DNA from: Gracilinanus agilis
Taxonomy: Eukaryota
Assembly: GCF_016433145.1 (NCBI RefSeq)
Contig: NC_058133.1
Coordinates: forward strand, 250,998,629-251,062,628
Length of the DNA: 64,000 bases
Reading direction: 5' to 3'
Every line of letters starts with the position of its first letter. The stretch's first letter is position 1. The position numbers and the translations under genes are program-made. The notes under the pieces are model-generated. The model saw nothing but the letters and a program-made list of their open reading frames with translations. It ran no database searches and was not told the DNA's origin. Shown one piece after another: positions 28,801 to 50,176 of the stretch.

Positions 28801-31800
28801 AAAGATCCTGGGGTGGCAATACATATTCTTTCCTGACTCCCCCCCCCCCAATTTTTCCAACTTGTGATTCCCACTCCTTCAAACCTGATCAAAAATTCCC
28901 CCATCAGAAATGAGTCTGGTCCGGGCACGAGTGTTAATCTCCAGAGTATAGCGGAGATGAGGAATCAGGAGCTGTGGAAAAAGGACAAGTAGAAATAAGA
29001 GAAAAGAAAGCTTCTATCCCACAGGACATTAGATTCTGGGTAAGGATGGTGCTACAATAGAGGAGCAGTGTGGATGATTACATAGCTGGCCTATGATGAG
29101 AACAGATGGGCAAGGAGATGAAAATGACCTCTGAAGGTGCTTTGATGGACAAGAAACTCAGGTAAGAAGAAAGTGATTGTTTTCTATGTATTGAGAGGGA
29201 AAAAATAGCAGCAAAGATGAAAGTGGAACTGAGAATATCATATTTGGGGAATGGGAGAAGACCAGACTGATTGGAGCAGAGGGTCGTGTATATGGAGCCA
29301 AATTATAGAAAGCTTTGAATACCAAGATGAGGTGTAGGAGTCATTTGTTGTAGTGTCTTAAGCAAAAGAGTCACTTTATGTGTTTTTTTTTTTTAAACCT
29401 TACCTTCCATCTTAGAATCAATACTGTGTATTGGTTCTAAGGCAGAAGAGCAGGGCCAGGGTTAAGTGACTTGCCCAGGGTCATACAGTTAAGAAGTGTC
29501 TGAGGTTTGATTTGAACCCAGGACCTCTCCAAACCTGGCTCTCAATCCACTGAGTCACCAGATTGCCCCTCCCCCAATGTGTATTTTTTTAGAAAGTTGA
29601 GCATTCCAAGTTCATCTGCATATTTTCTTCTGATTAGCTCAAAGTCTTTAATCTTATTTTCTCTAGGGCTTGGAAGTTTCGGAATCAATCTGAATTGTTG
29701 ATTCCTGGTGGCCACACTTTAAATATATATTTATAAAATATCTAAAATCTCCCTCTTACATCTTTCTTGAATCATTGAGGTATTGCTTATCATCTGGATC
29801 TCTGTAATTGCTTTCTACATTACCTTCCATTCATGGCTTCTCTTCTTCCTGCCAACAATGGTGGGTTTCCTAGAGTACTGATAAAGGCCCAAATGTACAT
29901 CTTCAGCCTGGACCTTTCAGTCTCCACTGCTATATGTCTAGCTAACAAAAATCTCTCTCCTCTTGAATGGCACACTGTGAGCACAGAGTTAACTTGTCTA
30001 AAGCCATACGCACCATATGTGCCCCCAATTGTATCTCCATTCACAGCAATTCTTCAGTTTCTGTCACTCAAACTCAAAAAATTACTCAAGCCTGACTCCC
30101 TTGCTTCCTCATCTCTAATCACCCAGCCCAGTTGAATCTTCCTTTCTAATGTCCTAGGTCCTGCCCTCCCCTTCTCATAGCCACCTCATTCCTGTAATTT
30201 ACAACCTAATTGGCTTCACTATTTTTAGCCTATCTCCATTCCACTATGCAGCTTAATCTTAAAACACCAACTTTCAACAAAAATGTCCACAAAGTGCTTA
30301 ACTTGATCTTAAAGGTCTCCACAGATCTGGTCCCCAATACCTTAAAAGCCTCTCACTTCTCCCCTGCACAAACCCTCCAATTCATGTAGCCTGGTCCACA
30401 CACTTTCCTCCCATCTCTGCCATGGTCATTCCTGACTCTGCTCAAAGTGAAGGAAGAAAGGGAAGGCAAGTGAATGAGAGGGAGTAAGAGAACAGAAAAA
30501 AGGGGAGAGTGTAGGAGCAAGGGAGAGGAGAAGGAAAGAAGAGAATGAATGGGAGAGAGAGTGCAAACAGATGTTAGGAAGAGAGCACCTGAGTGATTGT
30601 AAATTGTAGTACCTGTTTGTATGGCTATCGTGAGCTGCAAAGTGGGCCAAGAACTTCCCTACACTAGATTGTGACCATTCTAAAGGTCTCTGAGGCCACA
30701 TCATTTCTTGAATCCTTCAGAGATTTCATCAGTGTAAGTCCCACAGGAAGTTCTTAGCACATACTGAGTTTCCACATTATTACAGTATGGAACCTTAGAA
30801 GGTAAGAATTACAAAGAACCTGAGATATCATTGACTCCATTTCATTTCACAGAGGAGGAAATTAAGGCCCATAGAAGGAAAAAGAATTGTTCTATCCTTT
30901 GAGCTGCCTCCCAGGATTCTTTGTTGTCAGGTGAAACACATAATGCCTGATTGGTGTGAAGAAACCCCCCTACCTGACTATTCCCCTATAATTGGATTTA
31001 GCTATCTTTTCCATTAGGGTCTGTGGTGGCAATCCATCACTGCCCTAGGTTAACAGGAGTGAAATGTGAAGGGTAGCTTAAAGGTAGAGTGAGTACCTTG
31101 AAGATGGGGTGCATCCCTGGGAGGCACCTCATGGTGGCTACAGCAAATACCTCAGCCACCAAATGAGTCTTCAGCAGATGTGCTTGCAGTTCATGTAGCT
31201 GGAAGTCAGAATTTTTGACCCAGGCCTTGGCCAGGAGCCAGGTGAGGGAGGGATCTGAGGGCAGGAAGAGTGGTGGGACTGGAGAGCCAGAGCAGGGAGG
31301 CTGGAGCTGGAGGACAACAGAATCAGTACAGTCATAAGCCTGGAACTGCATGGGACTTCAGAGGCTGAAGGGAGGTTAAATGACTTGCCCAAGATGAGAC
31401 ATCATCAGAGGAAGGAATGTGAACCCAGGGTGTCTTCTTCCATTCGCTGCTCTTTTAATTGAATTACATGTACAGAGTAGGGCATTAGATCTCTGGATCT
31501 TTGAAAGGAAGAGAGATTGATGAAGCAGAGCAGAGAAGTCAGAGGTCTTGGTTCCAGGGAAAAGGTTGGTGGGGAAGCAGTGGGTGGAGGAAGGCTGGAT
31601 AAGGGAGCTAGGTAGAAGGATGCCTGGGTTCCCTCACCTGGATGGCCAGGGGTAGCAGCTTCCCATCAGGCTCCATCTTAAACATAACTAGGGGGGCAGC
31701 TAGGTACTGTCTCTCCCCCTGGATCACATTGGGCTGGATTCCATCCAACAGGGAAAAGTCAGCTTCAAACAGGCAGCCCTCCTGGAAAATAGATTAGTCT

Positions 31801-34800
31801 GAGGTCAAGGATCAGAGGATAATGTAGAACATTTTTAATACCAGAGAGTGTCAAAAGGCTCAGCATAAAAGACTAAAAGAGAAGTCCAGATTCTTAAATG
31901 AGGTCCAGACCTACAGAATCTGAAAACCAGGAGGCCTCTTGGAGTTTGTTTAGTCTAACAGTCTCATTTTACAGTGGAGGAATCTGAGGCCCAGAGAAAT
32001 GAAATGACTTGTCTAGGATAACAACTACTCCAGCACAATGGGCATTAGAGACCAAGTCTGTGGACTCTAGAACCCTTTACCCCTAGAGAAATTAAAATGC
32101 CCCTTTGTTTTGGTGGTCATTTTCTTCAGTCTTCTAATCCCCCAAACCAAATCTAAACTCTATAACTATTTGACTTCTCTCTTTGACATGATCTTCTACC
32201 TCCTCAAACCTATCATCTCCCTCACTTTCAAGACATGGGTTTTTTTCTTCTCTGAAATATATTTCTCCTTTTCTCCAACATTTTATCTACTTTCCAAACT
32301 CCCAAGATTTCCTCTCTCCACTTCCTCCAAGAAAGTTTATTTAAATCATTTATCTGTTGATTCCCTCTTCTCTTACTTTCCTTGTGTTCTGAGATCCAGG
32401 ACTGGGATCCATTTAGAGAGTCTCATTTGTTTACCTGGTCTTATCTCCATCTGCTTCCTCTTTTTCTATCCTATTTCTTTTGTAATAGTAGGTTCATTTT
32501 ATTCTAATGAACCTTTTCCTTGTTTTTACATATCCTTAAGATTTCCCCAGAATGAAGTTCTGTATGAAAGATGGGTGTTGAATTAGTTTTGTTGACTACC
32601 TCTCTTCTATCAATACCATCTATGGCATTTCAACCTATCCCTTTCCCTAAACTAATATATCTATGTAAGTGTGTTTAATATATCTATGTAAGTGTGTTTA
32701 GAAACTAACCTAACTTAATTCCTAGGAGCCTTTTTAATTCTCTTGGTCACAGAAATGCAAAGGAAGAAGAAAGAATCAGAGTAGAGAAGAGACCAAGAGG
32801 AAAGGAACTACCTGGAGTTTTTTTTCCAGCTGAACCTGAATCTCTTCTGCCCCTGGGGGGATCACAAGTCTTGTGGGGAGTGAAGTAGACCTTCTCAGTA
32901 GTGTGGGGTTGACCCCATTGAGGAACTGGTAGCCAAAAAAATCATCATCCTTCCAGGACTGGCGCACCTTCTCTGGGAGCAGAAGGGAGATATCATAGTA
33001 CCCCAAGTACCTCTGTGGTACCAGGTATCAGCCCCCAATCTTGGGATGCCCCAGATGCTGTCAAGAGAGAAGCCACTTTAAGGGACATATTTCTGTGTAA
33101 AAATGGTTAGTGGAAGGGCAACAGGGATGTAGTATATGTGGGGGAAGGGAGGGTAGAAGTGAACTGTTATTGAAATGGGGAAGTGGAGCTGAGAATGTCA
33201 GGGACGGGTTATTGGAGAGGATCACCAAGCTTATGGAACTGTTACTGACTAGCCAGGGTACTCTTGCTGCACCAGAAGATTTGGTCAAAATCTTCTAAGC
33301 TACTCCAGGAGCTCAGAAGGGTGTACGTGCGTTTAAGAACAATCTCAGTCATTCTAGGATAAGGAGTAAAGAAATTAGTTGCTTGAATTTCAATCTCTCT
33401 CCCTCTCCCTCCAAATTCCCCAATCCCCAGATTTTCCATTGTGCCTGAGAGCTCCCACCACAAACCCCCAGTTTTTGCCCCTGGTCTCATTCCTACCCTG
33501 CAATCAGAGTTCCTTCAAAGTCAATCTTCTTATTCTCATGGAATCTCACATCCAGGGGTAGATCTTTCTCTGATTTTGCATCCACTGACAAGAGTATCCC
33601 TTTCTTCCAGGTGGCCCAGCTGGAGGTCCATAGAATTAAAAGTTAATAGGTCAGTGAAGGGTTAAAAAACAAGGGTTAGCAGAGATTAGAGGCCAAAGGG
33701 CGCAGTATAAATAAATTGGGACTCAGGAGTCAAAGCTTAAGTAACTGAGAGATCAGGGGTCAGGGACATCACCGATATAATCTCCTTCTTTCCTCCAGTT
33801 CCTCTTCTCTGTGTTTCTGAAACAAGCCCTGGACATCCTTCCCCATCATCCAAGCTGGGAAGACATGGGAACAAGGTCTCATTTATCTGTTCCATCCTCA
33901 CAGGTGTGTTCCCAGGCTGCTTTCTATCCCTGACCCCAGCTCACCAGTTTCTTTGAGTCTCATCCCCATTTTCTATTCCTCTCTGCCTCCATGTCCAACC
34001 CATTTCCCATCCCTCTCTTACTTGCCACCCTATGTTAGGACAGGTTTCCTGTTCTCATGTGTCCTTACCTCACCCCTCCTATCCCTATTTTTCCTCTGCC
34101 CCAGTTTTGTATGCTGTCTTTTCTGTCTCTACCCAACCCTCACTCACTCTCCTATTGCCTGTTCTTCAGAATCACATTCTTCACATTTTCTACTCTGAGA
34201 CCTTTGTTGTCACCTGTCTATGTCACCAGCTCCCTGGATTCACATACTGTACATTTTCTTCCTCATGTACTCTGTCTTACCCAGATAAAGATACTTTTTA
34301 ATGTCATATAAATAACATGTAATTTTTCTTTCAGCTACTTCTATTTCTGTCCTCCTGTCCTCTTACTGTATCCTGACTTTTTTGTGCTTTCCCTTCCTTA
34401 TATCTTCTGCCTTTCTTCTGATCCTTCCCTCAACCCTCCCTCTTGTTTTTCAACTTTAACCCCAACCACACCTCACTTTTAGGCAAGTCACATTCCTTTA
34501 ATGAGCCTGAGTTTCTTTTTCTTTTAAATAGGGCATTAATTTAGATGATCCCAAAGCTTCCTTCTAAGTCCTCTGCCCTCTCCCTGCCCCATCTCCTACC
34601 CTTCTTACCAGTAGCCTCAGGCAGGCAGATGATGCCATCTCCCTGCACCCATCTGTAGCAGGGGAACACTATCTCCTTCTCCTCCATCCTCTTCTCAGAG
34701 GCCCAAACAGTTATGTGGTTGCAGAACCAGGCATCCTTTAGGAAGAGATGGATTTTCCGGAGCTTCACAAATAAGAGGGGCCCCAGGTCTTCTGAGACAT

Positions 34801-37325
34801 CTACTTCAAAATCCTCCATCTAAGATGGCAGTGGAGGAGAAGGTAGGAGAACCTTTTAATTAAACCTTAGTGTCAAATATTGTCCCCATTTTATAGATAA
34901 GGGACCTGAAACTTCAAAAGGAAAAAGATTTTCCTGATGTGATCAATATGATAAAATTTCAATCAATATGGTAAGATGGTCTGTTGACACTATGCTTTAT
35001 ATAGAGATATTGAAAAGATGCTTTAGAGGAACTGTCTACTGTGCAATGCCATAAACACACACAGATACTCCCTGGCCCCCCCAGTATCAGACTTGGAAAG
35101 CATCTGAAGCCATCTACTCCAACTTTTACCCAAAGAAGAAATTCAATTTTCTTTCCATTACTGGGCTAGGCAAAGTGAGTTAAGTGATTTTCCCAAACTC
35201 ATAAATCTAAGAGGCCTGATGTGAATATAGAAACTTCCCCTCTCTAGGTCTACTTCTCAATATATTGAGCCATCTAGCTGTCCACTAATTCAATTTTATT
35301 TCAAGAGAAATAGTTACCCTTGGTCCAGGTACTATGCTAGGTGACAAAATGAATACTCTCATTGTCCTCAGGAATTTATGTTCTATTGTAAGGATACAAC
35401 ATGTTAAGTAAATAAAAAATGTTTTTCCTGGACAGAGTCTAAGAACTATCTCAGGTAGAATTTCACCTGAGTTGAGCCTTAAAGGAAAATGGGGGTCTTA
35501 AGAGGCTGAGGTGAGGAGAGAGAGCCTTCCAGATGTGGAGATTAGTCTGGATCAAGACAAAGTAGGAACAATGTCTTTACCACCTCCTCCCCAACCAGTG
35601 ATCATCCAGCCTTTGCTTAAAGATTTCTAATCAAGGAAACCCAATCCTTTTGAAGTCAACACATTACCCTTTGGGATTATGCACACTGTTGGGTAATTTT
35701 TCCTTTTATTACCTATAAATTTTGTAGGACCTTCAAATGTATATGCATTCCATTTTTAGGGTCTTCTTTCACTCTGGGACAGAGGTAAGTTATTAAGTTG
35801 AAAACCACTTAGAAGACAATGAAGATCACATTCTCAACTTCTGCAACCCAGAGTCCTGTTTTTCTTCCCACAGTCAAATAAGGATAAGAGAAATTAGCTT
35901 CCTGCTGGTGGAGGTAATCCAGTACAGATTCTTCTTACAATTTGTATGATCTTGCATCTCAGTATTCTCATTTTTAAATGGAGGAGAATATGGAAATTTG
36001 TATTGTGTGACAACACTGGAATAACCTATATAAGATTGTTTACTCTCTTGGGGACGGGTAGAAGGAGAAAGAAAAGTTGGATTTCAAAAAGTCAGAAAGC
36101 AATTGTTAAAATTTGTTTCTATATAAATAAAATAAATAGAATTTTTAAAAAGTGAAGGAGTTGGATAAGATGATCACAGGGCAAATTCATAATAGGAACT
36201 TGGTCAATCGAATAAAATCTGGAAAGTTCTTTCTATTTGTAATGCCTATTTATCCATTAGATACCATCATGGACGCTATAGGATCATGCCTAGGTAGGAA
36301 TACTAATATGCTATTAGAAATGAAAGCAACTGTTTCAGAGAAACTTGGGAAGACTTGTATGAATTGATCCATAGTAAAGTGAGCAGAACCAGGAGAACAA
36401 TATATACAATAACAACAGTATAAAGAGAAATAGCTTTGAAAGAGTTAAGAACTCTGATTAACCAACCCCATCAAGGTACTCATGATTTGTTGGACTCAGA
36501 ATGCAGATTAAAACCCATAATTTGGACATGGCCAATTTAGGAACTGGTTTGCTTCACTGCATATTTGTTACAAGTGTTTTGTTTTTCTTTTTCATGGTCA
36601 TGGGGCAGGATGGGAGGGAGAAAAAGTAGAGTTTTGTTTACTAAAATTAATATATAAATGCCAAGACAAGAAAGAGGGGGGAAAAAGGACTATAAAAACA
36701 TACCACATTTCCATAGTATTTTTCAGAAGTTGTACTGATTGGTATGTTGGCCAATCAACCTTAATTTTATGGAGAGAGAAACTGATTCCCAGAAAGAAAA
36801 AGTGATTTGGCTACCCAGGAACAAACTAGGTCCTCAGAGGGCAGAGGTGAGGCATCTTAGCCCAGATCCTCTGGCTCCAAATTTACTACTGTTTCTACAC
36901 ATCCCCCAGCACTATCCCCTACCCTCCAAATTTTTGGCTTTGGGGTACATGGGTTTCCCTGGGCACTGCAGAAGGCCATACAAAGGCCCTGAGCATGCCC
37001 TTTTAAGGTTTCCCCTTATATAAATCCATTGGCTTACAAGAAGAGAGTTCCAGGTGTCCTGGTTCAGTATCACTGTGCTTTAAAAATCTTCAGCCCAGAG
37101 CAGTTTCCTGACTCTCAACTGTCCCAGTGTGCAGCTCCCAGACTACTCAGTCCCCCAATCTCCCCTTCACATCCATACCCAGCTTCTGACCTGTCCTCGA
37201 GTGGGCCGCAGCTGCAGCCCCAGTTCCGCCTCTGCACGCTGCCCAACCAACCATAGCTGCACCTGGTTGGTTGACCCTGAGAAGGCGAAGCTCCCGGTGG
37301 CCACACGTACTCTGTACCGACCCAT
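22852..37325 (-). CDS. ALOX12: Intact arachidonate lipoxygenase, ALOX12 (platelet 12S-LOX)-type, 665 aa, 14 exons (copy A)
   Basis: Exons: 37325-37191 (135), 34819-34609 (211), 33854-33773 (82), 33619-33497 (123), 33353-33250 (104), 32972-32812 (161), 31781-31638 (144), 31306-31097 (210), 28971-28885 (87), 27975-27806 (170), 25100-24979 (122), 23557-23457 (101), 23316-23149 (168), 23031-22852 (180). All GT-AG; 1998 nt with no stops. Fe ligands retained ([21 protein letters not shown]-terminal ENSITI). Adjacent to RNASEK like human ALOX12; the orthology call rests on synteny and motifs. Confidence 0.92.
23582..24321 (+). mobile_element. Solo LTR (740 bp) in ALOX12 intron 11
   Basis: TGTTA...TTACA termini and a 4-bp TSD TGGA (23578-81 / 24322-25). 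Internal AATAAA at ~24128. Absent from the paralogous intron of copy B (~44480). Confidence 0.85.
26022..26225 (-). mobile_element. SINE1_Mdo-type SINE with a 17-bp TSD
   Basis: TSD cacttgcctagactttt at 26004 and 26226. Confidence 0.92.
29384..29570 (-). mobile_element. SINE1_Mdo-type SINE
   Basis: T-tail followed by the reverse-complement SINE body. Confidence 0.8.
32653..32698. repeat. Perfect 23-bp tandem duplication
   Basis: taatatatctatgtaagtgtgtt x2. Confidence 0.95.
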
Positions 37326-38056
37326 CACGTTTGGAGACTCTGGATGCTGGGAGAAAAGTAACGGGAAAGTTACTTGCTCAGAGCTCTGCCCACTGCTGTC
37401 CAGTGTCTGTCCTGGTAACCAACTCAAGTCTTGTAGTGGAGAAGCCCTTCCCATATCCGCCTATGTGCCTACCCAGTCCCCACCCTTCTCAGAATCCAAG
37501 CCTTCACTTTCCCCACCCTGGGACAGGCCAGGACCTGCCACAGAAATTTGGGCAGGGAAGGGGGAGGTGGGGAGACAATGTCTGGAGTTTGTTTCTAGGT
37601 GATTAGGACTTCCTGAATGGGAAATGAGAGCTTGTATATTGGGGACAGGAAACTTGCCTTTTTTGTTTTGGGTGAATGTAGGGAGCAGATAAGTAATTTG
37701 ACAGAGACCTAAAAGAATATAGCCCCAGTTTCTTATATAACTAGGAAAAATTTCTCCAATCCCATGTAGCTTTAGTTAGAACCCTCCCATAAGTAGTAGT
37801 AGTCTTATTTTATAGATAAGACTGCTGAAAACCAGAAAGCCTAAATGACTTGTCTGAATCACACAGTTGATAAGTGTCTGATAGGATTCCTACTCTTGAA
37901 TCAAGCCTGATGTTCATTTCAGTGAGAAAGCTTTATTTAACTTTTTCCTTTCATCCAGCATGGAGGTGTTTTTAAGAGTGGGCTCTGGGGTCCTTTAGAG
38001 AAAGGACTAAAGTCCCTGTGAGCTTGGAAAGGCATTGTTGGAAGGGCTGGGGGTGG

Positions 38057-38229
38057 GAGTCTGAGGAGTGACTTCTCCACTAGCTTTGACTTCAGGTATT
38101 CATAAGGCAGGTTTTACTGAACATTTTGATCTCTTTCTCAAGGGAGTCCATATTTTCCCTAATACTGCTCAACACAGCCAGTTTCCCAGAGCTTTAGAAG
38201 TATTCATCTTTGTACTATTCCAGGAGAAC
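38057..38229 (-). pseudogene. Relic lipoxygenase exon 14 (third LOX paralog, copy C)
   Basis: Translates VLLE*YKDEYF*SSGKLAVLSSIRENMDSLEKEIKMFSK(frameshift)LPYEYLKSKLVEKS, collinear with copy A exon 14 ([56 protein letters not shown]). Confidence 0.85.
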
Positions 38230-38459
38230 TGGGCCAGATAGAACAAGCATTCCCTTTCAAAGATCATTGAAAAAGCTCCCTACTGTCCCTAAAGGAATTT
38301 AAGATTCATAGCTGTAAGGAATAAAAAAGAAATCTTAAGCATCCTTCTGGGCCTGTTCCTACCACTACTCCATTTCATAGATGAAATTCAGACTCAGAGA
38401 GGGGACTTGTCCAAGGTCACATAAGCTGATATTCAAGCCTAGATTTCACTCCAAATCTA

Positions 38460-39000
38460 GAGTTTGTTAGTAAGGTTTCTTAAGTACTAGACATTGTGCT
38501 GGGACAACTAAAGGCCAAAGATAATCCAGTCCAGGCATTTGGAGGAGGCAAGTTAAACAATATATATGTGCAGGCTAGATATAGGATAAATAGGAAATAA
38601 TTAACAAAATGAAAACACTAAGATTAAGAGCAGTTGGGAAGGACTTCCCGAAAAAGACAGCATTTTAGTTGAGACTTAAGAGAAGCCAAAAAGTGAGGAG
38701 GGAAGAACATTCCAGGCCTAATGGACAGCCAGATAAAATGCCTAAGGCTTAGAGATGGAGTATCTTGTTCATAGAACAGCAAGAAAGTTAATGTCATTGG
38801 ATCAAAAAGTATGTGGTGGGGAGTATGGTGTGAGAAGGCTAGAAATCTGGGTGGAGTGGGGGAAGAGGACTACATTAAGCTAGGTTTTACTACCAAAAGA
38901 GATTTTTGTTTTTGATCCTATTGGTAATAAAGAACTAGTGGTATTTAAGGAAAGATACATTGACTGTTGGAAGATGGATTGGAGCAGGGAGAGACTTTTA
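38460..39000. mobile_element. Old L2-like LINE fragment between the relic LOX exons
   Basis: L2-like phrases (taagtactagacattgtgct; tttgatcctattggtaat; gaagatggattggagcagggagagact). Recognised by resemblance only. Confidence 0.55.
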
Positions 39001-39068
39001 TACTACACTCTCCATCTGAGATTTAGATCCAACCACTGGCTCTCAATTTTAACTCCCCATCTACTCAC

Positions 39069-39231
39069 TATGGCTGAACTTGACCCAGTTGCCATATTAA
39101 AGAGATCTGGAGGCATTTCTGGTGTATACAGATTAGAGTGGCCATCACCATTTCCAGTGTCACATTCTTTGTGCTGGTGGGGGATTAGGCAAAGTGCATG
39201 GGGCATTAGGAACCCAGGTGTACCAGTCCAG
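39069..39231 (-). pseudogene. Relic lipoxygenase exon 13 (copy C)
   Basis: Translates [19 protein letters not shown](frameshift)[34 protein letters not shown]. The donor GTGAGT is intact; the acceptor is mutated to CAT. Confidence 0.9.
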
Positions 39232-40499
39232 ATGGAGAGAGAAAACAAAAAGCAGAATCTAGAATCACTCAGAAGCAAACACATGATTTCTCAGTTTCTT
39301 TTCTGAGGAAAGGATAATTTAATCAACTTCATTTTATATTGTTTTGTGCCTCTATATACTATAGCTTCATATTCTTAGCATGTTAGATATAATATTAGAT
39401 AAACAATATTATAATGCTAAGTTGTAATCATAATAAATTTAATAATAAGGAATAATTCTAATTATTCCTTGATTGAATAGATCTGTGGATGAGAACCAAT
39501 AATTGTAGTGTGCTTAAAATGAATTCTCTCTACGTATCTTTGCCAAGGGAAGTTTGTGTATACCTTCATTGTCTTGGAATATATCCAAAAGTTTCTGAAA
39601 CTGTTATCTCATTTGCTCTGAAGTTATAGAATAACCTTGGCTATCCTCATTATCATCATGTATGGAATTGAGGATTATGTAATCTGTCTAAAGAAAAGAG
39701 ATAAGGCAATATTATCTTGACCTTCTTGACAAGAAAAACCCTCACCCCTTCTTGCCAAGAAGGTACCCTGCCTCCAAAGGAAGACCCAACTTTCACAAGA
39801 AAAACCCCAGACCTTGTTGCCAAGAGGAGGGTGCCTGGCTTCCAAGGGAAGATGGATGACCTTTACAAGAAAGACCCTACTTGGCAGACCTCTTGTAAAT
39901 GGAATTTCTGTAATCTAGATGTCTCAGGCTACAGGGAAGTCTGTAGACCATGGAGCTGTGTGAGATGGGCATACATTCTGTTTCACTCAGAAGTTTGCTC
40001 CCAGTATTTTTCTTTTACATTGACCCTATTCAGTTTTACACTTCAATTGGTGAGCAGGGCTGGGCTTCATTCCTGATTTCATGATACTGTATAAGTGAAA
40101 AGCAAGAAACAACAAAGCAGAACTACTCAACTACTCGGTGGAATGGAGGAAGAGGAGATATTGGGGAGAGTAAGGGAAGCCTGGGTGATGTTTGTGGCAG
40201 ACACACAGAGACAGCAAACTGTTGACTGTTGAAGTTTTGGGAGTGTTCTGGGTTCTTTGAGTTTGGAGGAAGCTTGGCAGACAAGACTGGGGAGTGTGCA
40301 GTTTAGGGAAGTATTTCGAAGGTGTCTTAGTGGGATCTTCTCCAAAGAAAGAGAAGGGGAGGGAAAGAGATTCAGTTTTTTGGCTATACTTCGAGTTTCA
40401 TTCATTCAGTAAACATTAATTGGGCTCCACTTTCATGCTGTGCACTTAATGCATTAGGTCTTACAATTGGATACTGCACTACTTTAAATCCCTGCAATT

Positions 40500-41900
40500 T
40501 CTTCTGTGTGGGTAGGTAGATCTTGGGTCAATTGTAGCTCACAGCTGGAGGTGCTACTTCATAAACTCCTTAAAAGTTCTCCAAACCTGCTTTGGTCTTA
40601 ATCTCGACTTGGCTCAAAGGGAATGTAGAGTGTGAGGCTACATTTGAACTCAGATGTTACAGATTCCCTGCCCGGCACTTTGTCAACTGCTCCACCTTGC
40701 GGCTGCTGGAGGGGAGGGTTTGTCAATTGCCCTTTTCTTTGTATCCCCTTTCCTTTGTCCTCTAATTCCCCAAATTCTCTCCCTCTTCCCCACCACCTCT
40801 TTCCCTCACTCCCCCAAAGTTAGCTCCCACGATTCCTCGCAAACACTCTCTGGTCCCACCACAAAGGGGTTTCAACCATTCATTAGTTCCATGCTCCACA
40901 TCGGCTTCCTTCACGTTGCAGGCAGCCGCCTTGGGCACACAACAAAGGAAGGACGCCATGGCGAGGCCAGTAGGGCGGGGTGAGGGGCCGGAGCGTGGGT
41001 CTTAACTAGCGGAATTCTGGCTTCAGGTGCCTGGGCTGAGAGCAAGCAGGAAGAGAGACCTTTGTGGGATCAGGGGAGGTGGTGTCAAGGAAGGCCTGAG
41101 GGCGGAGCTAGATCTGGGAGGGGAGGGGTTCCTGGGTGGGTAGCGGNNNNNNNNNNNNNNNNNNNNNNNNNNNNNNNNNNNNNNNNNNNNNNNNNNNNNN
41201 NNNNNNNNNNNNNNNNNNNNNNNNNNNNNNNNNNNNNNNNNNNNNNNNNNNNNNNNNNNNNNNNNNNNNNNNNNNNNNNNNNNNNNNNNNNNNNNNNNNN
41301 NNNNNNNNNNNNNNNNNNNNNNNNNNNNNNNNNNNNNNNNNNNNNNNNNNNNNNNNNNNNNNNNNNNNNNNNNNNNNNNNNNNNNNNNNNNNNNNNNNNN
41401 NNNNNNNNNNNNNNNNNNNNNNNNNNNNNNNNNNNNNNNNNNNNNNNNNNNNNNNNNNNNNNNNNNNNNNNNNNNNNNNNNNNNNNNNNNNGGGGGTTCC
41501 GGGGGGGGTGGGGGGCGGGGGGGGGGGCGGACTAGAGATCAGGGGAGAAGCAGTTCAGGAGTAGGCAGGAGGAGGAGGTGTCCTCCACGGGGGCGGGGCG
41601 TGCTCCAAACTGGGTGGAGCCAAACGGTAGGGAGGTGGTGGGGTCGGGGTGTGGGGGGAGCCCACAGTGGAAGCTGTGGGGAAGAAATTAACTAAAATGG
41701 TCCTAAAATGGCAGGACAAGAAGGGATGTGGGAGGAGCCACAGGGAAAGATCCTTTTTTCTCTTATTTGAATTGGTCATAAATTAGAAATAGCATCTTCT
41801 CACCATTTCTCAGTTAAAATCCAAGTTCCTGGAATCAGTGTGCTTTTGTGGCTCAATTTGAAATATATCATTAGAAAAGCAGTTGTGATCAATTACATAA
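40500..41900 (-). pseudogene. Duplicated RNASEK 5' stub (promoter, 5'UTR, truncated exon 1, start of intron 1)
   Basis: gccATGG at 40959 encodes MASFLCCVPKAAAC (RNASEK: [14 protein letters not shown]). Intron-1 block ggggtttcaaccattcat (~40866) matches agggtttcaatcattcat (~19722). 5'UTR ttcaggtgcct matches 19974. 41735-41870 aligns with 20663-20820. No exon 2 or 3 was found. Confidence 0.88.
41147..41491. other. Assembly gap (N-run) flanked by extremely G-rich sequence
   Basis: 345 N; the true length is unknown. Confidence 1.
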
Positions 41901-42453
41901 TGTTATATATATAGTTTGTTTAAAGCTTCTTTTACCAGAAAGGAAATTTAGGCCCCCAAAAGTTGTAATTTGTCCACTGTAATACAGGTTGTGTCAAGGA
42001 TAATATTTAAACCTAGTTCTCAAAATTAAATAATCTTTCAACTGTTCTATACTTTTCTTCCTATAAAAGCATCAAGTGCTCACACCTGAAATTCTGTGTT
42101 AAATTAATATTCATGAACTTAGGAGAAAGTAAAACAGATTGGAGATGTTGCAGAAAAAGTCAAATGTAGCTATACTATAGTGTGGTACAGGTGATCAGAG
42201 TTCCATTCCTACCCTGATTCTCTCCTTTGTGACTTTGGGTTATTTAGTTCCATCCTAAAAACTCCATTTTCCTCATTTGTCTGTGATGATAATATTTATG
42301 CTATCTCATAGGGTTGTTTTTGAAGAAAACACTTTATAAAATTTCAGTTTTATATAAATGTAAATAATATTAAAAGATTGGGGCAGAAGAGCTTTCTTAT
42401 GAGCAGGCTAAAAAGTTGATAGTTGTTCATTGGAGCCTGAGGATGGTCTATTG

Positions 42454-42620
42454 CAGGGGTCGGGAACATATGGCTCTTTCTGCAGGAGCCATAAAGTCAA
42501 TTTTTTTTCAGGCGCTGTTACAGGAGTGTGCACTGTGAGCACTGTATGGCTCTCATGAAATTACATTTTAAAAAATTTGGTGTTTATGGCTCTCATGGCC
42601 AAAAAGGTTGCCAACCCCTT
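42454..42620 (-). mobile_element. hAT/Charlie-type MITE (167 bp)
   Basis: Terminal inverted repeats CAGGGGTCGGGAAC / GTTGCCAACCCCTT; perfect 8-bp TSD GTCTATTG. Reverse complement of the element at 46570. Strand is nominal. Confidence 0.9.
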
Positions 42621-45600
42621 GTCTATTGGGAGAAGCAAACTTTATTTGGATTTCAGAGTTCTAGATTCAAAACCCATATTTGATACTTACTAGCTGGATG
42701 ACTTCAAATTTAGCTTCTATAACTATGCATATGTAAAATAAGGATAAAAATACCAATATTATTTTTCTCAGAATTGCAAGGATCATATAAAAATATACAT
42801 AAATTACTCTGCAAATCTTAAAAGGAGAAGCTAAAAGTGAATTTTGCCTTTTTCTGGAATGATAAAGACGGGATCTGACTAAAATATGTCAGTTTTGCAG
42901 TAAAGGAACTGCATTGCATTCCCTCTCCCACCACCACCCCCCAACATGAAAGAGACAAATTTGGAACAAGATGAAAGACGTGCTTTATACACAGGCAGTG
43001 ACCTCATAGAATGATTTAGCCATGGTGCTGATCAGAATGATGATAGAAATAGAATGAGGGTAGATAAAAGAGGCGTAGCCACATTCATGGAGGTCAGACC
43101 TCAATGATTGTTTGGAAAGTTACTTTTAACCTTTTGAGCCAGGGAAGATGATTGTGATTTCTCATATCATCCTTCCTGGTGATATGAAAAATAGTCCTGG
43201 TCTGTGGCCATATGCCAGTATTGCAGTTATTTTGTTCCATGAGCAACATAGTTTGAGATGGCTTATAGTATATAGATTTATCCATTTATTTATTGCAGAT
43301 TTTAGCAAAGAGACAGGGATATGTAAGGACACAGAAGAAATGATGTAGTATAACTAGGGGGACTATCAGTGATAAGAGAAGAAAATTGGAAACTTCATAT
43401 CTGATTACACTGGGAGCTTTCCAATCCTTGGACAGAATGATAACAGAGGGCTTCCTGTCCCAGGAAGAAAGTCAAAGGGAAGATTATGTCTTTCCAGGAA
43501 TAGCAGCACCAGAGAATGACAAACATATGTGGGGAGTGGGAGAGGAATATGCCAAGGAGCTGAGTATGAACTAATGACCCCTGATACTGGAGGGTGATAT
43601 TAAAGACCCCCCCCCTCAAAGACTGAGTGAAAAAGGGAAGATAGATCAGATATAGGGACAGAACCTCAAACTTGTGATTTTCGTATTTATAGTTATGAGA
43701 TTAAAAAGACTAGGATTAGGAAAAGAAATGGGGCTTTTCCAACCCAATTAGAGTAATAGTCAGCCAGATGTTTTTAAGTAGCTAAGTGTTTTAAATGGTA
43801 ATGCTGTTCTCTATCCTGCTTGGCTGAAGGTACTCATAGGACAGATCCAGGCCTTCATTACGGGCCAGAATCTTTCTTTCCAGCGTATCCAAATATTCCT
43901 GGAAATGGCTCAGTATAGCTTTAGGCTCAGGTCCTGAGAAGTATTCCTCCTTGTGATTACCCAGGAGTACCTGAGGCAGAGAAAGAAGGCATCTCAGAGT
44001 CATAAGCTTCAGGTTTGTAGACTCTCAGCTACCACTTCAAGTCCCTTACCCCTGGGACTTCTACTCTCTTTGAGGGCCCTGGCTCTCACCCTGTTTGGCT
44101 GGATCCGACTCAGAAGCCATACCACAGCCATATGGAGATTGGCCTGATAGACTTTGGGTAGTGTGGCCATCATAATCTCTAATGTTACATCCTTTGTGGT
44201 TGGTGGGGGCTGCTGCATAGTGCCTGGAGCATTAGGAGCCCAGGCATACCAGTCTTCTTGTTGGTAGAGAGAGAAGCTGAAATCATTCATGATCCCAGGG
44301 ATTTTAGCTCTTAGTTCCTTTCCCCATGAAGGTTCTCTTCAGTCCTGAGGAAGGAATGTATCTGGGCCCCTTACCTGTCCCTGATTAATAGCTGAGCATG
44401 TGAAGATACACAAAGTGAGAAAGTGGCAGAGGTCAGCCCTGGATTAGAAGGAGAAAGGAAACCCTGGAAGAGAAAAGAGTTTGTGGAAGAAACTGAAGAC
44501 TCAGGGAAAAACAAGGGCTGGTGTACTCAGGCCAAGATCTTTGATATATAGATTTAGGAAAATTTTTACTCTTAAAAGTTGTGTTATCAAATGTTTTATT
44601 TATCCCTTTATTTTAGAGAGATTTAGAGGGCGTAAATAATTTCTTCCAGTCATAATATTTTTCTCTGGCAAATCTCCTTACATTGTAGTAGGGTTTAGAA
44701 TTGCATATTAATTGTATATAGTCAACTGCAGTAGATAGGGGAAAGGACCAGAAAGCCTAAAGATTAGAAGTGAAAAGGAAAGGGATACTGACCACAGGAA
44801 CTTAGTCTTAGATGGATGAAATATCTCTCAATTTTATCCATGAGTAGAGGTGGTGAAAATGGTGGCTAGAGATCCTAAAATCTACTTATTGGCAATAGAA
44901 CCCCACTGCCGTGTGGTGTCGTATGTTTTATGTGGGTCTTGGTGCCTTATGTTTATGGGCTAGGTTTGTTTCTGTATTGTTTGTAACCACGTGGGATAAG
45001 GATAAGGTACAGAGGTCTGAGATCATCTTAGGTGGCCCCTAGGCTTGGAAATATTTTCTGAAGGGTATTGGCACTCAGAGGGCTTTTAGAGAGGGCTCCA
45101 GGGAGGGGTTAGAAAAAAGAGGAGATGACTTTTCAATATTACAGATGTCACATCTTATCTCGGGCCTGAGCCCCACACAATCCAATCTCAGTGATCTCTC
45201 TGCACCAGGCCTGTAGCTCAAGGTCACTCTGTACAACCTTGTCCCCTGAATAATGGAGATGAACTATTCCTTGCACATACCTGCTCCCCAATAGAGAAAG
45301 GGATTAAGGAAGATCAGCTGAAGGACACGCTCTAGAGGCATGTCTCCCATGATCACAGAATCATAGTCTGAAGGAAATTTAAGGAACATTCTCTTTTATC
45401 CCAAACTGACTAAAAATCCTTTTTATATCATTCCCAACAAGATATGATTCTGTCTTCATTTGAAGATCATTAGTGAGGGGAGACCTGAGGTATCCCATTA
45501 CCTTTAGTGTAGCTTTATATGTCTGGCAGCTGTTCCTTACATCAAAGTTTAGATCTTTCTCTTTCCCACTCTTTTCATTGCTCCTAGAGTTGCTCCTTGA

Positions 45601-46176
45601 GGCATCACAGAATAATTCTAATTCTTCTGCAGATGCTGGTCCTTTAAGTGATTGAAACTTATTCTGTTCTTCTCATCAGATCAGCAGAACAGAAAGTTAT
45701 TCTGTTCTACCTTTTCCCCTCCCTTTGGATAATGAGATTCTTTGTCATTTTCTAGCCCTGCAGCATCTCTTCTATGCCTCTGACTTTTTATACATCACTA
45801 ACATTAGTTCAGCAATCTCATTAGGATCATGGGATTTCATTGATTTGTGTCCAGTGAATAGAAATTGTCCAAAGGAGTTAGGTGCTCTCCTGCTATCTCT
45901 ATGCTTGTCTTGGGTTTCAATTTCCTTCTCTCCATTTTTCTTCTTTCCAATCCAAGATCTTTCTTCTCTACATCATCAGCTCATCCAGCCATACAGGAAT
46001 CCTATCCCCTCTCTGGTATTTTTTGCCCAAATGTAACTTAGAAAGCCTTTTATTATCTTTAACTTTGATCATCAGATTCAGATAATGTTGTTCTTGACAC
46101 TGTTCTTATAAGATTCTTTTGTGTTCATTCTCAATTATCTGCCCTCTTTTATTTTAATTAATTAATTTTCAAGCCT

Positions 46177-46330
46177 TTACTTTCTATCTTAGAGTCAAGA
46201 CTAAGTATTGTTTCCCAGGTAGAAGAGTGGTAAGAGCTAGGCAATGAAGGTTAAGTGACTTGCCCAGGGTCACACAGCTAAGAAGTGTCTGAGGTCAGAT
46301 TTGAACCCAGTGCCTTCTCTTTCTAGGCCT
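46177..46330 (-). mobile_element. SINE1_Mdo-type SINE
   Basis: Reverse-complement SINE body, 5'-truncated. Confidence 0.75.
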
Positions 46331-46569
46331 GGTTTCCTTTTCATTTAAATATTGTTTCACCTTTATCTCATCTTTAATGTATTTCTATTTCTGTGTATTT
46401 TATTAGGTATTCATTTATTAGGACATTAACACACTGTACTAATATGCAGTTATAAATTATAGTATAACTACATGCATATAGGTGGTAAATAAATATACCT
46501 ATTTTGGAAGTGCATGCTCAAAAATACTTTTTCATGATCACAAAAGTTAGGGAAACCAATGATCTAAGA

Positions 46570-46776
46570 CAGGGGTCAGCAACCTTTTTGGCCGTGAGAG
46601 CCATAAACGCCACATTTTTTAAAATGTAATTTCATGAGAGTCGTACAGTGCTCACGGTGCACGCTCCTGTAATAGCCCCTGAAAAAAAATTGACTTTATG
46701 GCTCCTGCAGAAAGAACCATATCTGGTCCTCAAAAGAGCCAGATATAGCTCAAGAGCCATATGTTGCCAACTCCTG
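46570..46776 (+). mobile_element. hAT/Charlie-type MITE (207 bp), same family as 42454-42620
   Basis: Terminal inverted repeats CAGGGGTCAGCAAC / GTTGCCAACTCCTG; perfect 8-bp TSD ATCTAAGA. Strand is nominal. Confidence 0.92.
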
Positions 46777-48080
46777 ATCTAAGAGATTAAAGCCCAGCCC
46801 TGAGTAGTTAGTACAGTTTAGACTTTGTTGATTTCCCTATGAATCAAGGCATCTTTCTGACTATGTAAATCATCATGCCAGTTATGAAGGTGAGGGAAGA
46901 TATGGAATTTATGTTCTGTCTTTGCTAAGTATCCTAATTGTATTGTAGTTGAGTGAATTTACTTTTGTCAAATAGGATGTGGTGCATGAGTATCTTATTT
47001 CTTTCCATTCCCAAACTAGAAGCGTAGTACTGTTAGGTTTGGAGCTTAACACGTGCTTTTTACCCTTTGCTCCATTTATCCTTTTCCTTTGAATAAGAAA
47101 AACCTTTTCATTGTCATGGTTTTTGTCACGAGTTGTTCTTCCCTGAATCTCATTGGTTCCAGTTTTCTGTCTTGCTTATTACCTATGCTTCCTGCATGTT
47201 TGCCACCTGCTTGATTTATTAGTAGTTTCTTTCTAAGATTCTGTCTTCTCTGAATTACTGGGTATCTCTACTAGTATTCTTCCTCCTTTGTTGTTCTCAC
47301 TGTGTCTCTCCCTCTCCATCTAGATTGCTAGATTTATCTAGAACACTTGGTCCTTACTTTTTAATTCAAACTTTTTTTTGGCCCCATTTAACTTATTTCT
47401 TATATCTGTATATCTAAAGACAAGTCACTTAATGTTGCTGAGTCCCAGTTTCTTCTCTTGTAAAATGGACATACCATTCATAGGTATGAGTAATGTACCT
47501 TATAAGTGTGAACTATTATTGTTCCCTAGAAAGTCAGATAACATAAATAACCCTAACTCTTGCAATAACTTTCATCTTTTCAGATTTGTTTTTTGTTTGC
47601 CTAGTTTAGATTGTCTGGTTCTGGGTCCCCTCTTGCCTTTTCATTATTGAGATCCCTTAGCCCATCTTTCCCTTGTACTAGTCCATTCCTCTGCTAGGTT
47701 CCCCTTTCTCACCAGGAGATTATTTCCAGAGCCTGAGTGCATCATGGGCAGAGTGGATGGAATCCCCAGAAGCCCTCTGTCAGCAAGGTCATCAGGAGGG
47801 CAGAGGGATCGATAGGTCAGACAGGCTGTTGCCCTGCAGAGGATATCCAGATGACCTCCCCCACCAGTGTTCATCACCTGTGTTGGTTGAATGGGGAATT
47901 GGGATGGAAGTAAGGGCTGAAATATAGGAATTAGAAAGGAAGTTGGAAGGAATTCAGAGAATAAGGTGATTTTTTTTGTTTTTCTTTCTTTCTCATGTTC
48001 CCAATTATTTTTGGCCTAGACTATTGTAATAACTTTCTAACAGCCTTCTTGATCTCTAGACTCTTCTTGTCTGATCATTC

Positions 48081-48548
48081 TGTTAGGGTTCAAAATGGGT
48101 GGCCTCCAGAGGAACACATGAGACAATGCAATCAAAGCAGGAGAAAGCTTTATTGCCAGTACGCACTGGGGAAACTCATCAAAGAGAGTCCCGCCCCATG
48201 CATTCAGAAGAGGGAATATATATGTTTCTAGGATATAGGTGCCTTTGTCTTAGGGTGAGCTAATAGTTAGATAGAGGGAGTAGGGGATGCTTTCAGGTGC
48301 TGCAGGACATGATTCTTAATCTTCAAGGTTGTTCCGCTTAGGAGTTGTGTCCCTGGGCTGTCAGCCAAGAGTTGGGTCCCTGGAACCTTGAGTCAGAGAG
48401 ATAACTGACCTGATTTGAGTCAGAGAGATAACTGACCCGCTTGGGCATAACGTTATCCAAAACCCCCTGCTTAATTTGCCAAGTTTAGTTTTTTGGCCAT
48501 AATATTCTTAATAAGCTATAATATTTCTATAAGCTTTTTGCTATAACA
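48081..48548 (-). mobile_element. Solo LTR (468 bp) in pseudogene intron 9
   Basis: TGTTA...TAACA termini; 4-bp TSD ATTC; minus-strand AATAAA at 48149-54; internal 27-bp tandem repeat at ~48389-48440. Confidence 0.85.
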
Positions 48549-48578
48549 ATTCTTCGGTGTGGTCAGAATAGTCTAGAT

Positions 48579-48770
48579 CAGTGATTCCCAAAATGTGTTT
48601 ACCGCTCCCTGGTGGGTGCTGCAGCGATCCAGGAAGGCGGTGATGGCCACAGGTGCATTTATCTTTCCTATTAATTGCTATTAAATTTTTTAAAAAATTA
48701 ATTTCCAGGGGGCTAAGTAATATTTTTTCTGGAAAGGGGGCAGTAGGCCAAAAAAGTTTGGGAACCACTG
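48579..48770. mobile_element. Second hAT MITE family (192 bp)
   Basis: Terminal inverted repeats CAGTGATTCCCAAA / TTTGGGAACCACTG; perfect 8-bp TSD GTCTAGAT. Empty paralogous site at 28205. Confidence 0.93.
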
Positions 48771-49967: not shown

Positions 49968-50176
49968 TTTTTTTTTGTTTGTTAGTTTTTGTTTTTTTTT
50001 AAACCCTTGTACTTCGGTGTATTGTCTCATAGGTGGAAGATTGGTAAGGGTGGGCAATGGGGGTCAAGTGACTTGCCCAAGGTCACACAGCTGGGAAGTG
50101 GCTGAGGCCAGGTTTGAACCTAGGACCTCCTGTCTCTAGGCCTGACTCTCACTCCACTGAGCTACCCAGCTGCCCC
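49968..50176 (-). mobile_element. Young SINE1_Mdo-type SINE
   Basis: T-rich tail followed by the full reverse-complement body ending cagctgcccc. Confidence 0.9.

What the first reader, a model, noticed from the sequence alone, without database searches (positions are those of the whole stretch)
34819..41900. Promoter capture: a duplicated RNASEK housekeeping promoter/exon 1 faces the intact ALOX12 in compatible phase
Seen: the stub keeps a perfect Kozak context (cctcgccATGG), the CC..PK.AAC motif, GC boxes and G/CpG-rich flanks. It has lost the TM-coding 3' half of exon 1 but kept the donor region (AAC|GTGAAG at 40914; RNASEK has TTG|GTGAGG). This gives a 15-codon phase-0 exon, MASFLCCVPKAAACN. 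ALOX12 exon 2 (34819) is phase 0 and itself begins with ATG. Inference: a chimeric transcript could express a lipoxygenase lacking exon 1 (truncated PLAT domain, new di-Cys N-terminus) under a ubiquitous, possibly TFEB-responsive promoter, or the stub could act as an enhancer or interfering lncRNA for ALOX12. The donor lacks +5G, so it is weak.
Basis: inference. Interest (0 to 1): 0.85.

Follow-up and report, generated by a model that had tools for sequence, protein, structure and literature searches.

The report
Leftover RNASEK stub from tandem duplication
The RNASEK-like start upstream of ALOX12 is real, but it is a broken leftover at the joint of an old tandem duplication, and nothing tested shows that it drives or re-heads ALOX12.

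Summary
On the minus strand a 15-codon RNASEK exon-1 remnant runs from the ATG at 40959 to a GT at 40914. It lies 3.6 kb upstream of an intact 663-aa, 14-exon ALOX12 whose exon 2 (34819) is phase 0 and starts with ATG.

The arrangement is a passive product of a tandem segmental duplication of the unit [LOX-C 3' end + ALOX12 + RNASEK 5' end]. This scan had already noted that duplication on this window (s1-190014). The stub sits 3' of a second ALOX12 copy (43794-63793) exactly as true RNASEK (19901) sits 3' of the intact copy. That second copy is a pseudogene with at least six disabling lesions. Stub and true RNASEK differ as much (K2P 0.43) as the paralogous non-coding DNA (0.30-0.45).

The proposed donor scores about -1 bit. 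That is below all 13 ALOX12 donors and only 28th of 170 GTs nearby. Frame compatibility is a 1-in-3 coincidence. No RNA run holds the stub, but the RNA test was weak.

It may therefore still be an unmethylated orphan island. The gap does not touch the stub, and its two sides are collinear with the paralogue. Interest is low to moderate.

The parts
40915..40959 (-). RNASEK exon-1 remnant: ATG plus 15 codons (MASFLCCVPKAAACN), phase 0
40748..41040 (-). Full extent of DNA homology to true RNASEK (19614-19995): about 70 nt upstream of the ATG, the exon-1 remnant with a net 33-nt loss, and the first ~170 nt of intron 1 with a further ~55-nt deletion. No relic of RNASEK exon 2 or 3.
40909..40917 (-). 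Donor-like site AAC|GTGAAG. It lacks G at -1 and G at +5. Approximate PWM score is -1.0 bit, rank 28 of 170 GTs between 41040 and 37330.
40900..41146 (.). CpG-rich flank on the low side of the gap: GC 0.63, CpG o/e 0.52, two GGGCGG boxes
41147..41491 (.). Assembly gap (unread). Its flanks are collinear with 19984-20700 of the true locus. The position homologous to the true promoter's CACGTG boxes falls inside it.
41492..41750 (.). G-run and CpG-rich flank on the high side of the gap: GC 0.68, o/e 0.52, three GGGCGG boxes, poly-G low complexity
41754..43793 (-). Intergenic DNA 3' of copy B, collinear with the ALOX12-to-RNASEK intergenic DNA 20700-22851
43794..63793 (-). ALOX12 copy B, a pseudogene. 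Lesions: 26-nt deletion in exon 1; frameshifts in exons 6, 7 and 10; in-frame stops in exons 8 and 12; 12-nt deletion removing TVQH, which holds the His at the place of an iron-ligand His of lipoxygenases (my own knowledge, not tested here).
38066..39245 (-). Relic of exons 13 and 14 of a third lipoxygenase (LOX-C'), with stops and frameshift. It is more distant from A and B than A is from B.
22852..37325 (-). Intact ALOX12 (copy A): 14 exons, all GT-AG, 663 aa. Exon 1 is 37325-37191 and exon 2 is 34819-34609.
18651..19995 (-). True RNASEK: exon 1 CDS 19901-19824, exon 2 about 19040-18970, exon 3 to the stop at 18651. Its CpG island is at 19600-20550, with CACGTG at 20284 and 20308.

Best explanation
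The stub is the truncated 5' end of a second RNASEK copy, left at the joint of an old tandem segmental duplication. The duplicated unit ran from intron 12 of an upstream lipoxygenase (LOX-C), through ALOX12, into RNASEK intron 1.

Read 5' to 3' on the minus strand, the locus is now: dead ALOX12-B, RNASEK stub, LOX-C' exon 13-14 relic, intact ALOX12-A, intact RNASEK, BAP18/C17orf49, mir-497/195. The stub 'faces' ALOX12-A only because a tandem duplication always places the last piece of the unit in front of the first piece.

Since then the stub has drifted at the neutral rate. It has lost the transmembrane-coding part and all later exons, and it is left with a donor-like GT of chance quality. 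It most likely makes no ALOX12 chimera.

It has kept CpG-island composition. It may therefore still be an unmethylated orphan island with some promoter-like activity, but that step is inferred, not shown.
For: - Collinear paralogy of the two units: 41930-47000 matches 21318-26814, 34800-37254 matches 60520-63748, and the stub blocks match 19619-19907. 41754-41928 matches 20700-20876. Upstream of exon 1, 37137-37533 matches 63632-63963.
- The stub lies about 2.8 kb 3' of the copy B stop. True RNASEK lies about 2.95 kb 3' of the copy A stop.
- Copy B carries at least six disabling lesions.
- Stub-to-true K2P is 0.43, against 0.30-0.45 for A-B non-coding blocks.
- Homology stops about 200 nt into intron 1, and no RNASEK exon 2 or 3 relic exists.
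- The LOX-C' relic begins about 14 nt before exon 13, and it is the outgroup to A and B.
- The donor scores -1.0, against 3.68 for true RNASEK and -0.71 to 7.3 for the ALOX12-A donors. It ranks 28th of 170 GTs.
- The only run holding the stub is the DNA run X1. The transcriptome-like runs X20-22 hold the ALOX12-A 3' end but have zero depth on the stub.
- No gene call with the stub ORF is on record.
- The duplication is not an assembly artefact. The copies differ by 25-40%, and one X1 contig covers 39406-41146 with no differences at an even depth of about 30.
Against: - CpG o/e around the stub (0.52 on both sides of the gap, GC 0.63-0.68) equals that of the real islands in this window. It is far above background (0.03-0.15) and above the decayed 5' end of dead copy B (0.15, against 0.36 in copy A).
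- Most stub CpGs are not shared with true RNASEK (2 shared, 9 stub-only). Density was therefore kept by turnover, as expected for DNA that stayed unmethylated in the germline.
- Orphan CpG islands often initiate transcription (PMC2944787).
- The RNA test had little power. There were three small runs, exon 1 of ALOX12-A was also uncovered, and the tool's filter can remove conserved exons.
- The LOX-C parent gene and the far breakpoint lie outside the window, so the one-event model is not fully verified.
Confidence: 0.7

Rival explanations
1. The stub is a live orphan CpG-island promoter. It is still unmethylated and fires non-coding transcripts, either unspliced or cryptically spliced and possibly in both directions. 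These transcripts could modulate ALOX12-A by transcriptional interference or enhancer-like activity, without making a chimeric protein.
For: - CpG o/e is 0.52 on both sides of the gap, kept by turnover, while the neighbouring dead ALOX12-B 5' end decayed to 0.15.
- Five GGGCGG boxes are present.
- The switch in GC skew at the ATG is the same as at true RNASEK.
- Many orphan CGIs show transcription initiation (PMC2944787).
Against: - No RNA run in the index holds the stub, and X20-22 have zero depth on it. This evidence is weak.
- O/e 0.52 is below the classical 0.6 island cut-off.
- Part of the G+C richness is poly-G low complexity next to the gap.
- No CACGTG box is in the read flanks.
- No Rfam family matches in 37000-43500.
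Confidence: 0.24
2. Transcription from the stub splices 40915 to 34819 and yields an in-frame chimeric lipoxygenase. The protein would carry 15 RNASEK-derived residues in place of the first 45 residues, leaving a half PLAT domain. It would be expressed from a broadly active, possibly TFEB-responsive promoter.
For: - The frames fit: the stub is phase 0, exon 2 is phase 0 and starts with ATG.
- Orientation is the same, and an upstream alternative first exon would naturally skip exon 1.
- The island composition is kept.
- Fusion transcripts across duplication breakpoints are known (PMC5345166).
Against: - The donor lacks both G-1 and G+5, scores below every real donor of ALOX12-A, and ranks 28th of 170 GTs in the interval.
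- Phase match is a 1-in-3 chance.
- The stub shows neutral-like divergence and no coding constraint.
- Exon 2 covers only PLAT profile positions 51-106 of 117, so the product would carry a broken beta-sandwich.
- AATAAA and ATTAAA signals lie in between, at 39443, 39323 and 37937.
- No CLEAR box is in the read sequence.
- No RNA evidence was found.
Confidence: 0.05
3. The stub and the second ALOX12 copy are an assembly artefact created around the gap.
For: A gap of estimated length lies 188 nt from the stub ATG.
Against: - The copies differ by 25-40% and carry different lesions, unlike a falsely duplicated assembly.
- An independent DNA contig of run X1 covers 39406-41146 without differences at single-copy depth.
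- The flanks of the gap are collinear with the paralogue and have matching spacing.
Confidence: 0.01

Closest known systems
Partial (truncated) unprocessed pseudogenes at the joints of tandem segmental duplications
   Same: Homology is at DNA level and includes the promoter-proximal region and the intron. The flanks are collinear. The copy is cut inside an intron at the unit boundary, has lost essential coding parts, and shows neutral-like divergence. The co-duplicated neighbour (ALOX12-B) is also pseudogenised.
   Different: The stub has kept CpG-island composition despite about 0.4 substitutions per site, which a methylated dead fragment would not be expected to do.
Gene fusion and new-promoter use after incomplete segmental duplication, such as HYDIN2 (PMC5345166) and the human-specific duplicates in PMC6169893
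   Same: An incomplete duplicate is placed next to foreign gene parts at a breakpoint. In principle a promoter from one gene can head exons of another.
   Different: In HYDIN2 the fusion transcripts, the new start site and the altered expression were shown by RACE and long reads. Here no transcript is shown, the donor is of chance quality, and the downstream gene keeps its own promoter and exon 1.
Orphan CpG islands (Illingworth et al. 2010, PMC2944787)
   Same: It is a CpG-rich, GC-box-rich block away from any intact gene start, derived from a housekeeping promoter.
   Different: Unmethylated state, H3K4me3 and initiation are untested. O/e 0.52 is under the classical 0.6 cut-off, and part of the island is unread.
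RNASEK (V-ATPase-associated small membrane protein) promoter with CLEAR/E-box elements
   Same: The ATG context, the CC.PK.AAC N-terminus, the C-rich upstream strand and a block about 70 nt upstream (GGCACCTGAA...) are shared with the true gene.
   Different: The true promoter has CACGTG at 20284 and 20308, including TCACGTGA. The read stub flanks have none, and the homologous place is in the gap. The transmembrane segment and exons 2-3 are gone.

Membership tests
Truncated genomic duplicate (unprocessed pseudogene fragment) of RNASEK | DNA homology extending beyond the coding sequence into the intron and upstream region, showing it is not a retrocopy | tested here: met
   40748-41040 aligns to 19614-19995, including about 170 nt of intron 1 and about 70 nt 5' of the ATG.
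Truncated genomic duplicate (unprocessed pseudogene fragment) of RNASEK | Flanks collinear with the parent locus, as part of a larger duplicated unit | tested here: met
   41754-47000 matches 20700-26814. The stub lies 3' of ALOX12-B as RNASEK lies 3' of ALOX12-A.
Truncated genomic duplicate (unprocessed pseudogene fragment) of RNASEK | Loss of parts needed for the parent's function | tested here: met
   Net 33-nt loss of the transmembrane-coding half of exon 1. Exons 2 and 3 are absent. No Pfam hit for the read-through ORF.
Truncated genomic duplicate (unprocessed pseudogene fragment) of RNASEK | Divergence like that of neutral DNA of the same age | tested here: met
   K2P is 0.43, against 0.30-0.45 in A-B introns and intergenic blocks. 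The 48-nt exon block at 81% is not significantly above that range.
Promoter-capture / fusion gene (HYDIN2 type) | Transcripts that start in the captured promoter and join to exons of the recipient gene | tested here: inconclusive
   No RNA run holds the stub. X20-22 have zero depth on it, but also on ALOX12-A exon 1.
Promoter-capture / fusion gene (HYDIN2 type) | A competent splice donor in the captured first exon | tested here: not met
   AAC|GTGAAG scores -1.0 bit, below all 13 ALOX12-A donors and true RNASEK (3.68), and ranks 28th of 170 GTs. The PWM frequencies are approximate and come from memory.
Promoter-capture / fusion gene (HYDIN2 type) | Compatible reading frame across the proposed joint | tested here: met
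   The stub is 45 nt and phase 0. Exon 2 starts at phase 0. The chance expectation is 1 in 3.
CpG-island promoter | Composition: GC above 0.5, CpG o/e at least 0.6 over at least 200 nt (the classical criterion) | tested here: inconclusive
   GC is 0.63-0.68 and o/e is 0.52 on both sides of the gap. That is below 0.6 but equal to parts of the true RNASEK island (0.51-0.87) and far above background. The middle of the island is unread.
CpG-island promoter | Unmethylated state and transcription initiation | not testable with these tools
   No methylation or CAGE data were available. Only the indirect evolutionary argument from CpG retention applies.
TFEB/CLEAR-regulated promoter | CLEAR element (GTCACGTGAC-like, core CACGTG) near the start site | tested here: inconclusive
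   There is none in 40000-41146 or 41492-42500. The true gene has two, at 20284 and 20308. Their homologous place (about 41330-41370) lies in the gap, which was not to be filled.
ALOX12 (platelet-type 12S-lipoxygenase) orthologue, for copy A | Intact ORF of about 663 aa with PLAT and lipoxygenase domains and canonical 14-exon structure | tested here: met
   663 aa, 14 exons, all GT-AG. PLAT and Lipoxygenase Pfam hits.
ALOX12 (platelet-type 12S-lipoxygenase) orthologue, for copy A | Closer to ALOX12 than to ALOX15, and conserved synteny with RNASEK, C17orf49 and mir-497/195 | tested here: inconclusive
   Human ALOX12 (8ghb) is the best or near-best hit for three exons, but ALOX15-type chains score only 0-14 bits lower. 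The synteny fits. No tree was made.

The most novel reading that the evidence does not exclude
The relic RNASEK island has stayed unmethylated for tens of millions of years because it works as an alternative, broadly active start site for ALOX12-A. That would give this marsupial lipoxygenase an expression breadth, or an N-terminally altered isoform, that no eutherian ALOX12 has.
Probability: 0.06. Interest if true: 0.55.

Novelty: new member of a known kind. Interest (0 to 1): 0.22.

Why it matters
If it is only a relic, it is a tidy textbook case of how a tandem duplication with both breakpoints inside genes leaves two broken gene ends back to back (an RNASEK 5' stub and a LOX-C 3' relic) plus a decaying full copy. 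It is useful for annotation, because it warns against calling a second ALOX12, a short RNASEK-like gene or a fusion here.

The one feature worth following is that a housekeeping CpG island seems to have survived as an island after losing its gene. Such islands are candidate raw material for new promoters. A simple CAGE, methylation or RT-PCR test would settle whether this one is alive.

Tried and rejected
- RNA evidence, indexing. The look-up of sequencing runs on the stub returned only X1, which proved to be a DNA run with an even depth of about 30. The search on the ALOX12-A last exon gave three small transcriptome-like runs of the same organism, plus many runs of another organism holding only 0.12 of the words.
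- RNA evidence, laying. Laying X1 and X20-22 on 35147-41146 showed no RNA contig on the stub, and none on ALOX12-A exon 1 either, so the result is uninformative. The 40915>34819 joint could not be tested in a single call, because the two ends lie 6.1 kb apart and the limit is 6000 letters.
- The look-up of encoding contigs with the stub's read-through ORF, using a small flank so as not to reach the gap, found nothing on record.
- Rfam on 37000-43500 at E up to 1 gave no match.
- Searches for relics of RNASEK exons 2 and 3, or more of intron 1, downstream of the stub found none.
- The 1.5 kb between 40748 and 39245 has no paralogue in the window, and its origin is unexplained.
- Retrocopy origin is rejected, because intron and upstream DNA are included.
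- Assembly artefact is rejected, because of the divergence between copies and the independent DNA contig.
- Gene conversion as the cause of the kept CpGs is rejected, because the CpG positions are not shared.
- No full-length protein search or ALOX tree was run. The spliced protein has no reference, and I did not type it into a call.
- A literature search for ALOX12, RNASEK and opossum found nothing on this stub. PMC9068934 only documents marsupial ALOX15 and ALOX12 genes.


Full report
**Observation.** All genes discussed lie on the minus strand.
- At 40959 an ATG in the context cctcgccATGG opens MASFLCCVPKAAACN. AAC|GTGAAG follows, with the G at 40914.
- True RNASEK starts at 19901 with [14 protein letters not shown]. 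It continues through the transmembrane half to TTG|GTGAGG, so its exon 1 CDS is 78 nt.
- The stub is therefore 33 nt shorter, and both exons end in phase 0.
- The likeness is at DNA level. Collinear blocks 40918-40965/19860-19907 (81%) and 40753-40898/19619-19753 (71%) were found by blastn. A global alignment carries the homology from about 70 nt upstream of the ATG to about 200 nt into intron 1, with deletions in the exon and the intron.
- It is therefore a genomic duplicate, not a retrocopy.
- The stub GT can be aligned with the true donor (GTGAAGGAAGCCG against GTGAGGAGGCCG), but another alignment is nearly as good. 'Kept the donor' is plausible, not proven.

**The gap.**
- The gap (41147-41491) lies 188 nt upstream of the stub ATG. 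The ORF, the donor and all RNASEK homology lie on its low side, so no frame crosses it.
- Its two sides fit the paralogous locus in order, orientation and spacing. Block 40960-41032 matches 19916-19984 and block 41754-41928 matches 20700-20876, which are 722 nt apart here and 716 nt apart there.
- I did not look for the gap's letters.

**What surrounds the stub.**
- A self-comparison shows two collinear units. Block 41930-47000 matches 21318-26814, and block 34800-37254 matches 60520-63748.
- Copy A (37325-22852) gives a clean 14-exon, GT-AG, 663-aa ORF.
- Its exons hit PLAT and Lipoxygenase in Pfam. They match human ALOX12 (8ghb) best or nearly best, with ALOX15-type chains close behind.
- Downstream of copy A lie RNASEK, a BAP18/C17orf49-like gene and mir-497 plus a mir-16-family hairpin. 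From my own knowledge, this is the order found at human ALOX12.

**Copy B is a pseudogene.** Copy B spans 63793-43794.
- Exon 1 has a 26-nt deletion.
- Exons 6, 7 and 10 have frameshifts.
- Exons 8 and 12 have in-frame stops.
- Exon 12 also has a 12-nt deletion. It removes TVQH, which contains the His that aligns with an iron ligand of lipoxygenases (my knowledge).
- The stub lies about 2.8 kb 3' of the copy B stop, just as RNASEK lies about 2.95 kb 3' of the copy A stop.

**The third lipoxygenase relic.**
- Between the stub and copy A there is a relic of exons 13 and 14 of a third lipoxygenase (39245-38066), with stops.
- It is further from A and B (K2P 0.33-0.62) than A is from B (0.22).

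**How the arrangement arose.**
- The simplest history is one tandem duplication of a unit that began in intron 12 of an upstream LOX-C gene and ended in RNASEK intron 1.
- The joint then necessarily puts the RNASEK 5' stub in front of the LOX-C 3' relic and the second ALOX12.
I reached the same structure independently.
- The far end, meaning LOX-C itself and the region beyond 63963, is outside the window and untested.

**Evidence against selection on the stub.**
- Stub and true gene differ by K2P 0.43 over 282 aligned sites. This is within the 0.30-0.45 range of paralogous introns and intergenic DNA.
- The 81% identity in the 48-nt exon block is not significantly higher than that.
- Keeping an ATG and 15 open codons is not unlikely at this divergence.
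- Exons 2 and 3 are gone.

**The donor.**
- AAC|GTGAAG lacks both G-1 and G+5 and matches 4 of the 9 consensus positions.
- It scores -1.0 bit with an approximate donor matrix whose frequencies come from memory, so the scores are rough.
- True RNASEK scores 3.68. The 13 ALOX12-A donors score -0.71 to 7.31.
- The stub GT ranks only 28th among the 170 GT dinucleotides between the stub and ALOX12-A exon 1.

**Other points on the chimera.**
- Frame compatibility with exon 2 is real but is a 1-in-3 event.
- Skipping exon 1 would remove PLAT profile positions 1-50 of 117, leaving a broken beta-sandwich.

**Evidence for a live promoter.**
- The one positive sign is composition. On both sides of the gap GC is 0.63-0.68 and CpG o/e is 0.52. 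This is like the true RNASEK island (0.51-0.87) and unlike the background (0.03-0.15) or other GC-rich non-island DNA (0.16-0.28 at 12-15 kb).
- The 5' end of dead copy B has fallen to 0.15, against 0.36 in copy A.
- Only 2 CpGs are shared between stub and true gene. Nine are stub-only and 13 are true-only. Density was therefore kept by turnover.
- Established knowledge of CpG decay leads one to expect that pattern for DNA that stayed unmethylated in the germline. A methylated fragment of this age should be near background.
- Orphan CpG islands often initiate transcription (PMC2944787).

**Cautions on that evidence.**
- Part of the richness is poly-G low complexity beside the gap.
- O/e is under the classical 0.6 cut-off.
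- No CACGTG/CLEAR box occurs in the read flanks, whereas the true promoter has two. Their homologous place falls inside the gap, so TFEB responsiveness cannot be judged.

**Transcripts.**
- The run index lists only X1 as holding the stub. X1 is a DNA run, with an even depth of about 30 and one clean contig over 39406-41146.
- Three small transcriptome-like runs of the same study hold two-thirds of the words of the ALOX12-A last exon and 3' UTR. They show zero depth on the stub, but also on ALOX12-A exon 1.
- The tool warns that conserved exons may be filtered out. This is therefore at most weak negative evidence.
- No gene call with the stub ORF is on record, and no Rfam family matches.

**Verdict.**
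- The origin is a breakpoint relic of a tandem duplication whose upstream unit is otherwise dead.
- 'Promoter capture' yielding a chimeric lipoxygenase is unsupported and unlikely (about 5%).
- A still-unmethylated orphan island with some non-coding promoter activity is a reasonable minority reading (about a quarter).
- The closest known analogues are partial pseudogenes at duplication joints and, conceptually, fusion genes such as HYDIN2 (PMC5345166). There the fusion transcripts were actually shown.
- I found no report of this stub in the literature.

Noticed in passing
window 43794-63793 (-): The second ALOX12 copy is a pseudogene. It has a 26-nt deletion in exon 1, frameshifts in exons 6, 7 and 10, stops in exons 8 and 12, and a 12-nt deletion removing TVQH in exon 12. 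Exons 9, 11, 13 and 14 still read open. Its introns are longer than those of copy A; for example exon 8 to exon 10 is 7.6 kb, against 3.1 kb.
   Followed up: yes
window 38066-39245 (-): Relic of exons 13 and 14 of a third, more divergent lipoxygenase. Intron 13 is enlarged to about 820 nt by a high-copy repeat (X1 depth up to about 2000 at 38547-38746). An AATAAA lies at 37937, about 130 nt after the relic's last exon.
   Followed up: partly
window 39246-40747: About 1.5 kb between the end of the stub's intron-1 homology and the LOX-C' relic has no paralogue anywhere in the window and is mostly single-copy in the DNA run. It may be filler or a later insertion at the duplication joint. Its origin is unexplained.
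   Followed up: partly
window 20283-20313 (-): The true RNASEK promoter carries two CACGTG boxes 24 nt apart, one within TCACGTGA. They lie about 385-410 nt upstream of the ATG, as expected for a lysosomal/V-ATPase-type CLEAR element.
   Followed up: no
window 14250-14334 and 14637-14714 (+): Rfam finds mir-497 (100 bits) and a mir-16-family hairpin (presumably mir-195), antisense to RNASEK and BAP18. This fits the conserved synteny of the ALOX12-RNASEK-C17orf49-MIR497HG region.
   Followed up: partly
window 41068-41091 and 41537-41560: A 24-nt direct repeat (75%) straddles the gap with a spacing of 469 nt. 'GGGGTTCC' also occurs at both gap edges. A local duplication or minisatellite may span the unread stretch and may be why it failed to assemble, along with the poly-G runs at 41501-41530.
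   Followed up: no
window 20865-21265, 26025-26194, 29390-29521, 46162-46332, 50019-50144, 53132-53310, 53746-53860, 57163-57303, 61474-61595, 62539-62696: There are many copies of one SINE-like element of about 160 nt, 73-85% alike, in both orientations. Two tandem copies at 20865-21265 account for the extra length of the true RNASEK upstream region relative to the stub unit.
   Followed up: no
window 27960-27975 (-), copy A exon 10: Copy A has Val-Val (..[12 protein letters not shown]..) at the place of the 'Sloane' specificity determinants. PMC9068934 reports this motif for 12-lipoxygenating marsupial ALOX15 orthologues, so ALOX12 versus ALOX15 orthology of copy A deserves a proper tree.
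   Followed up: no
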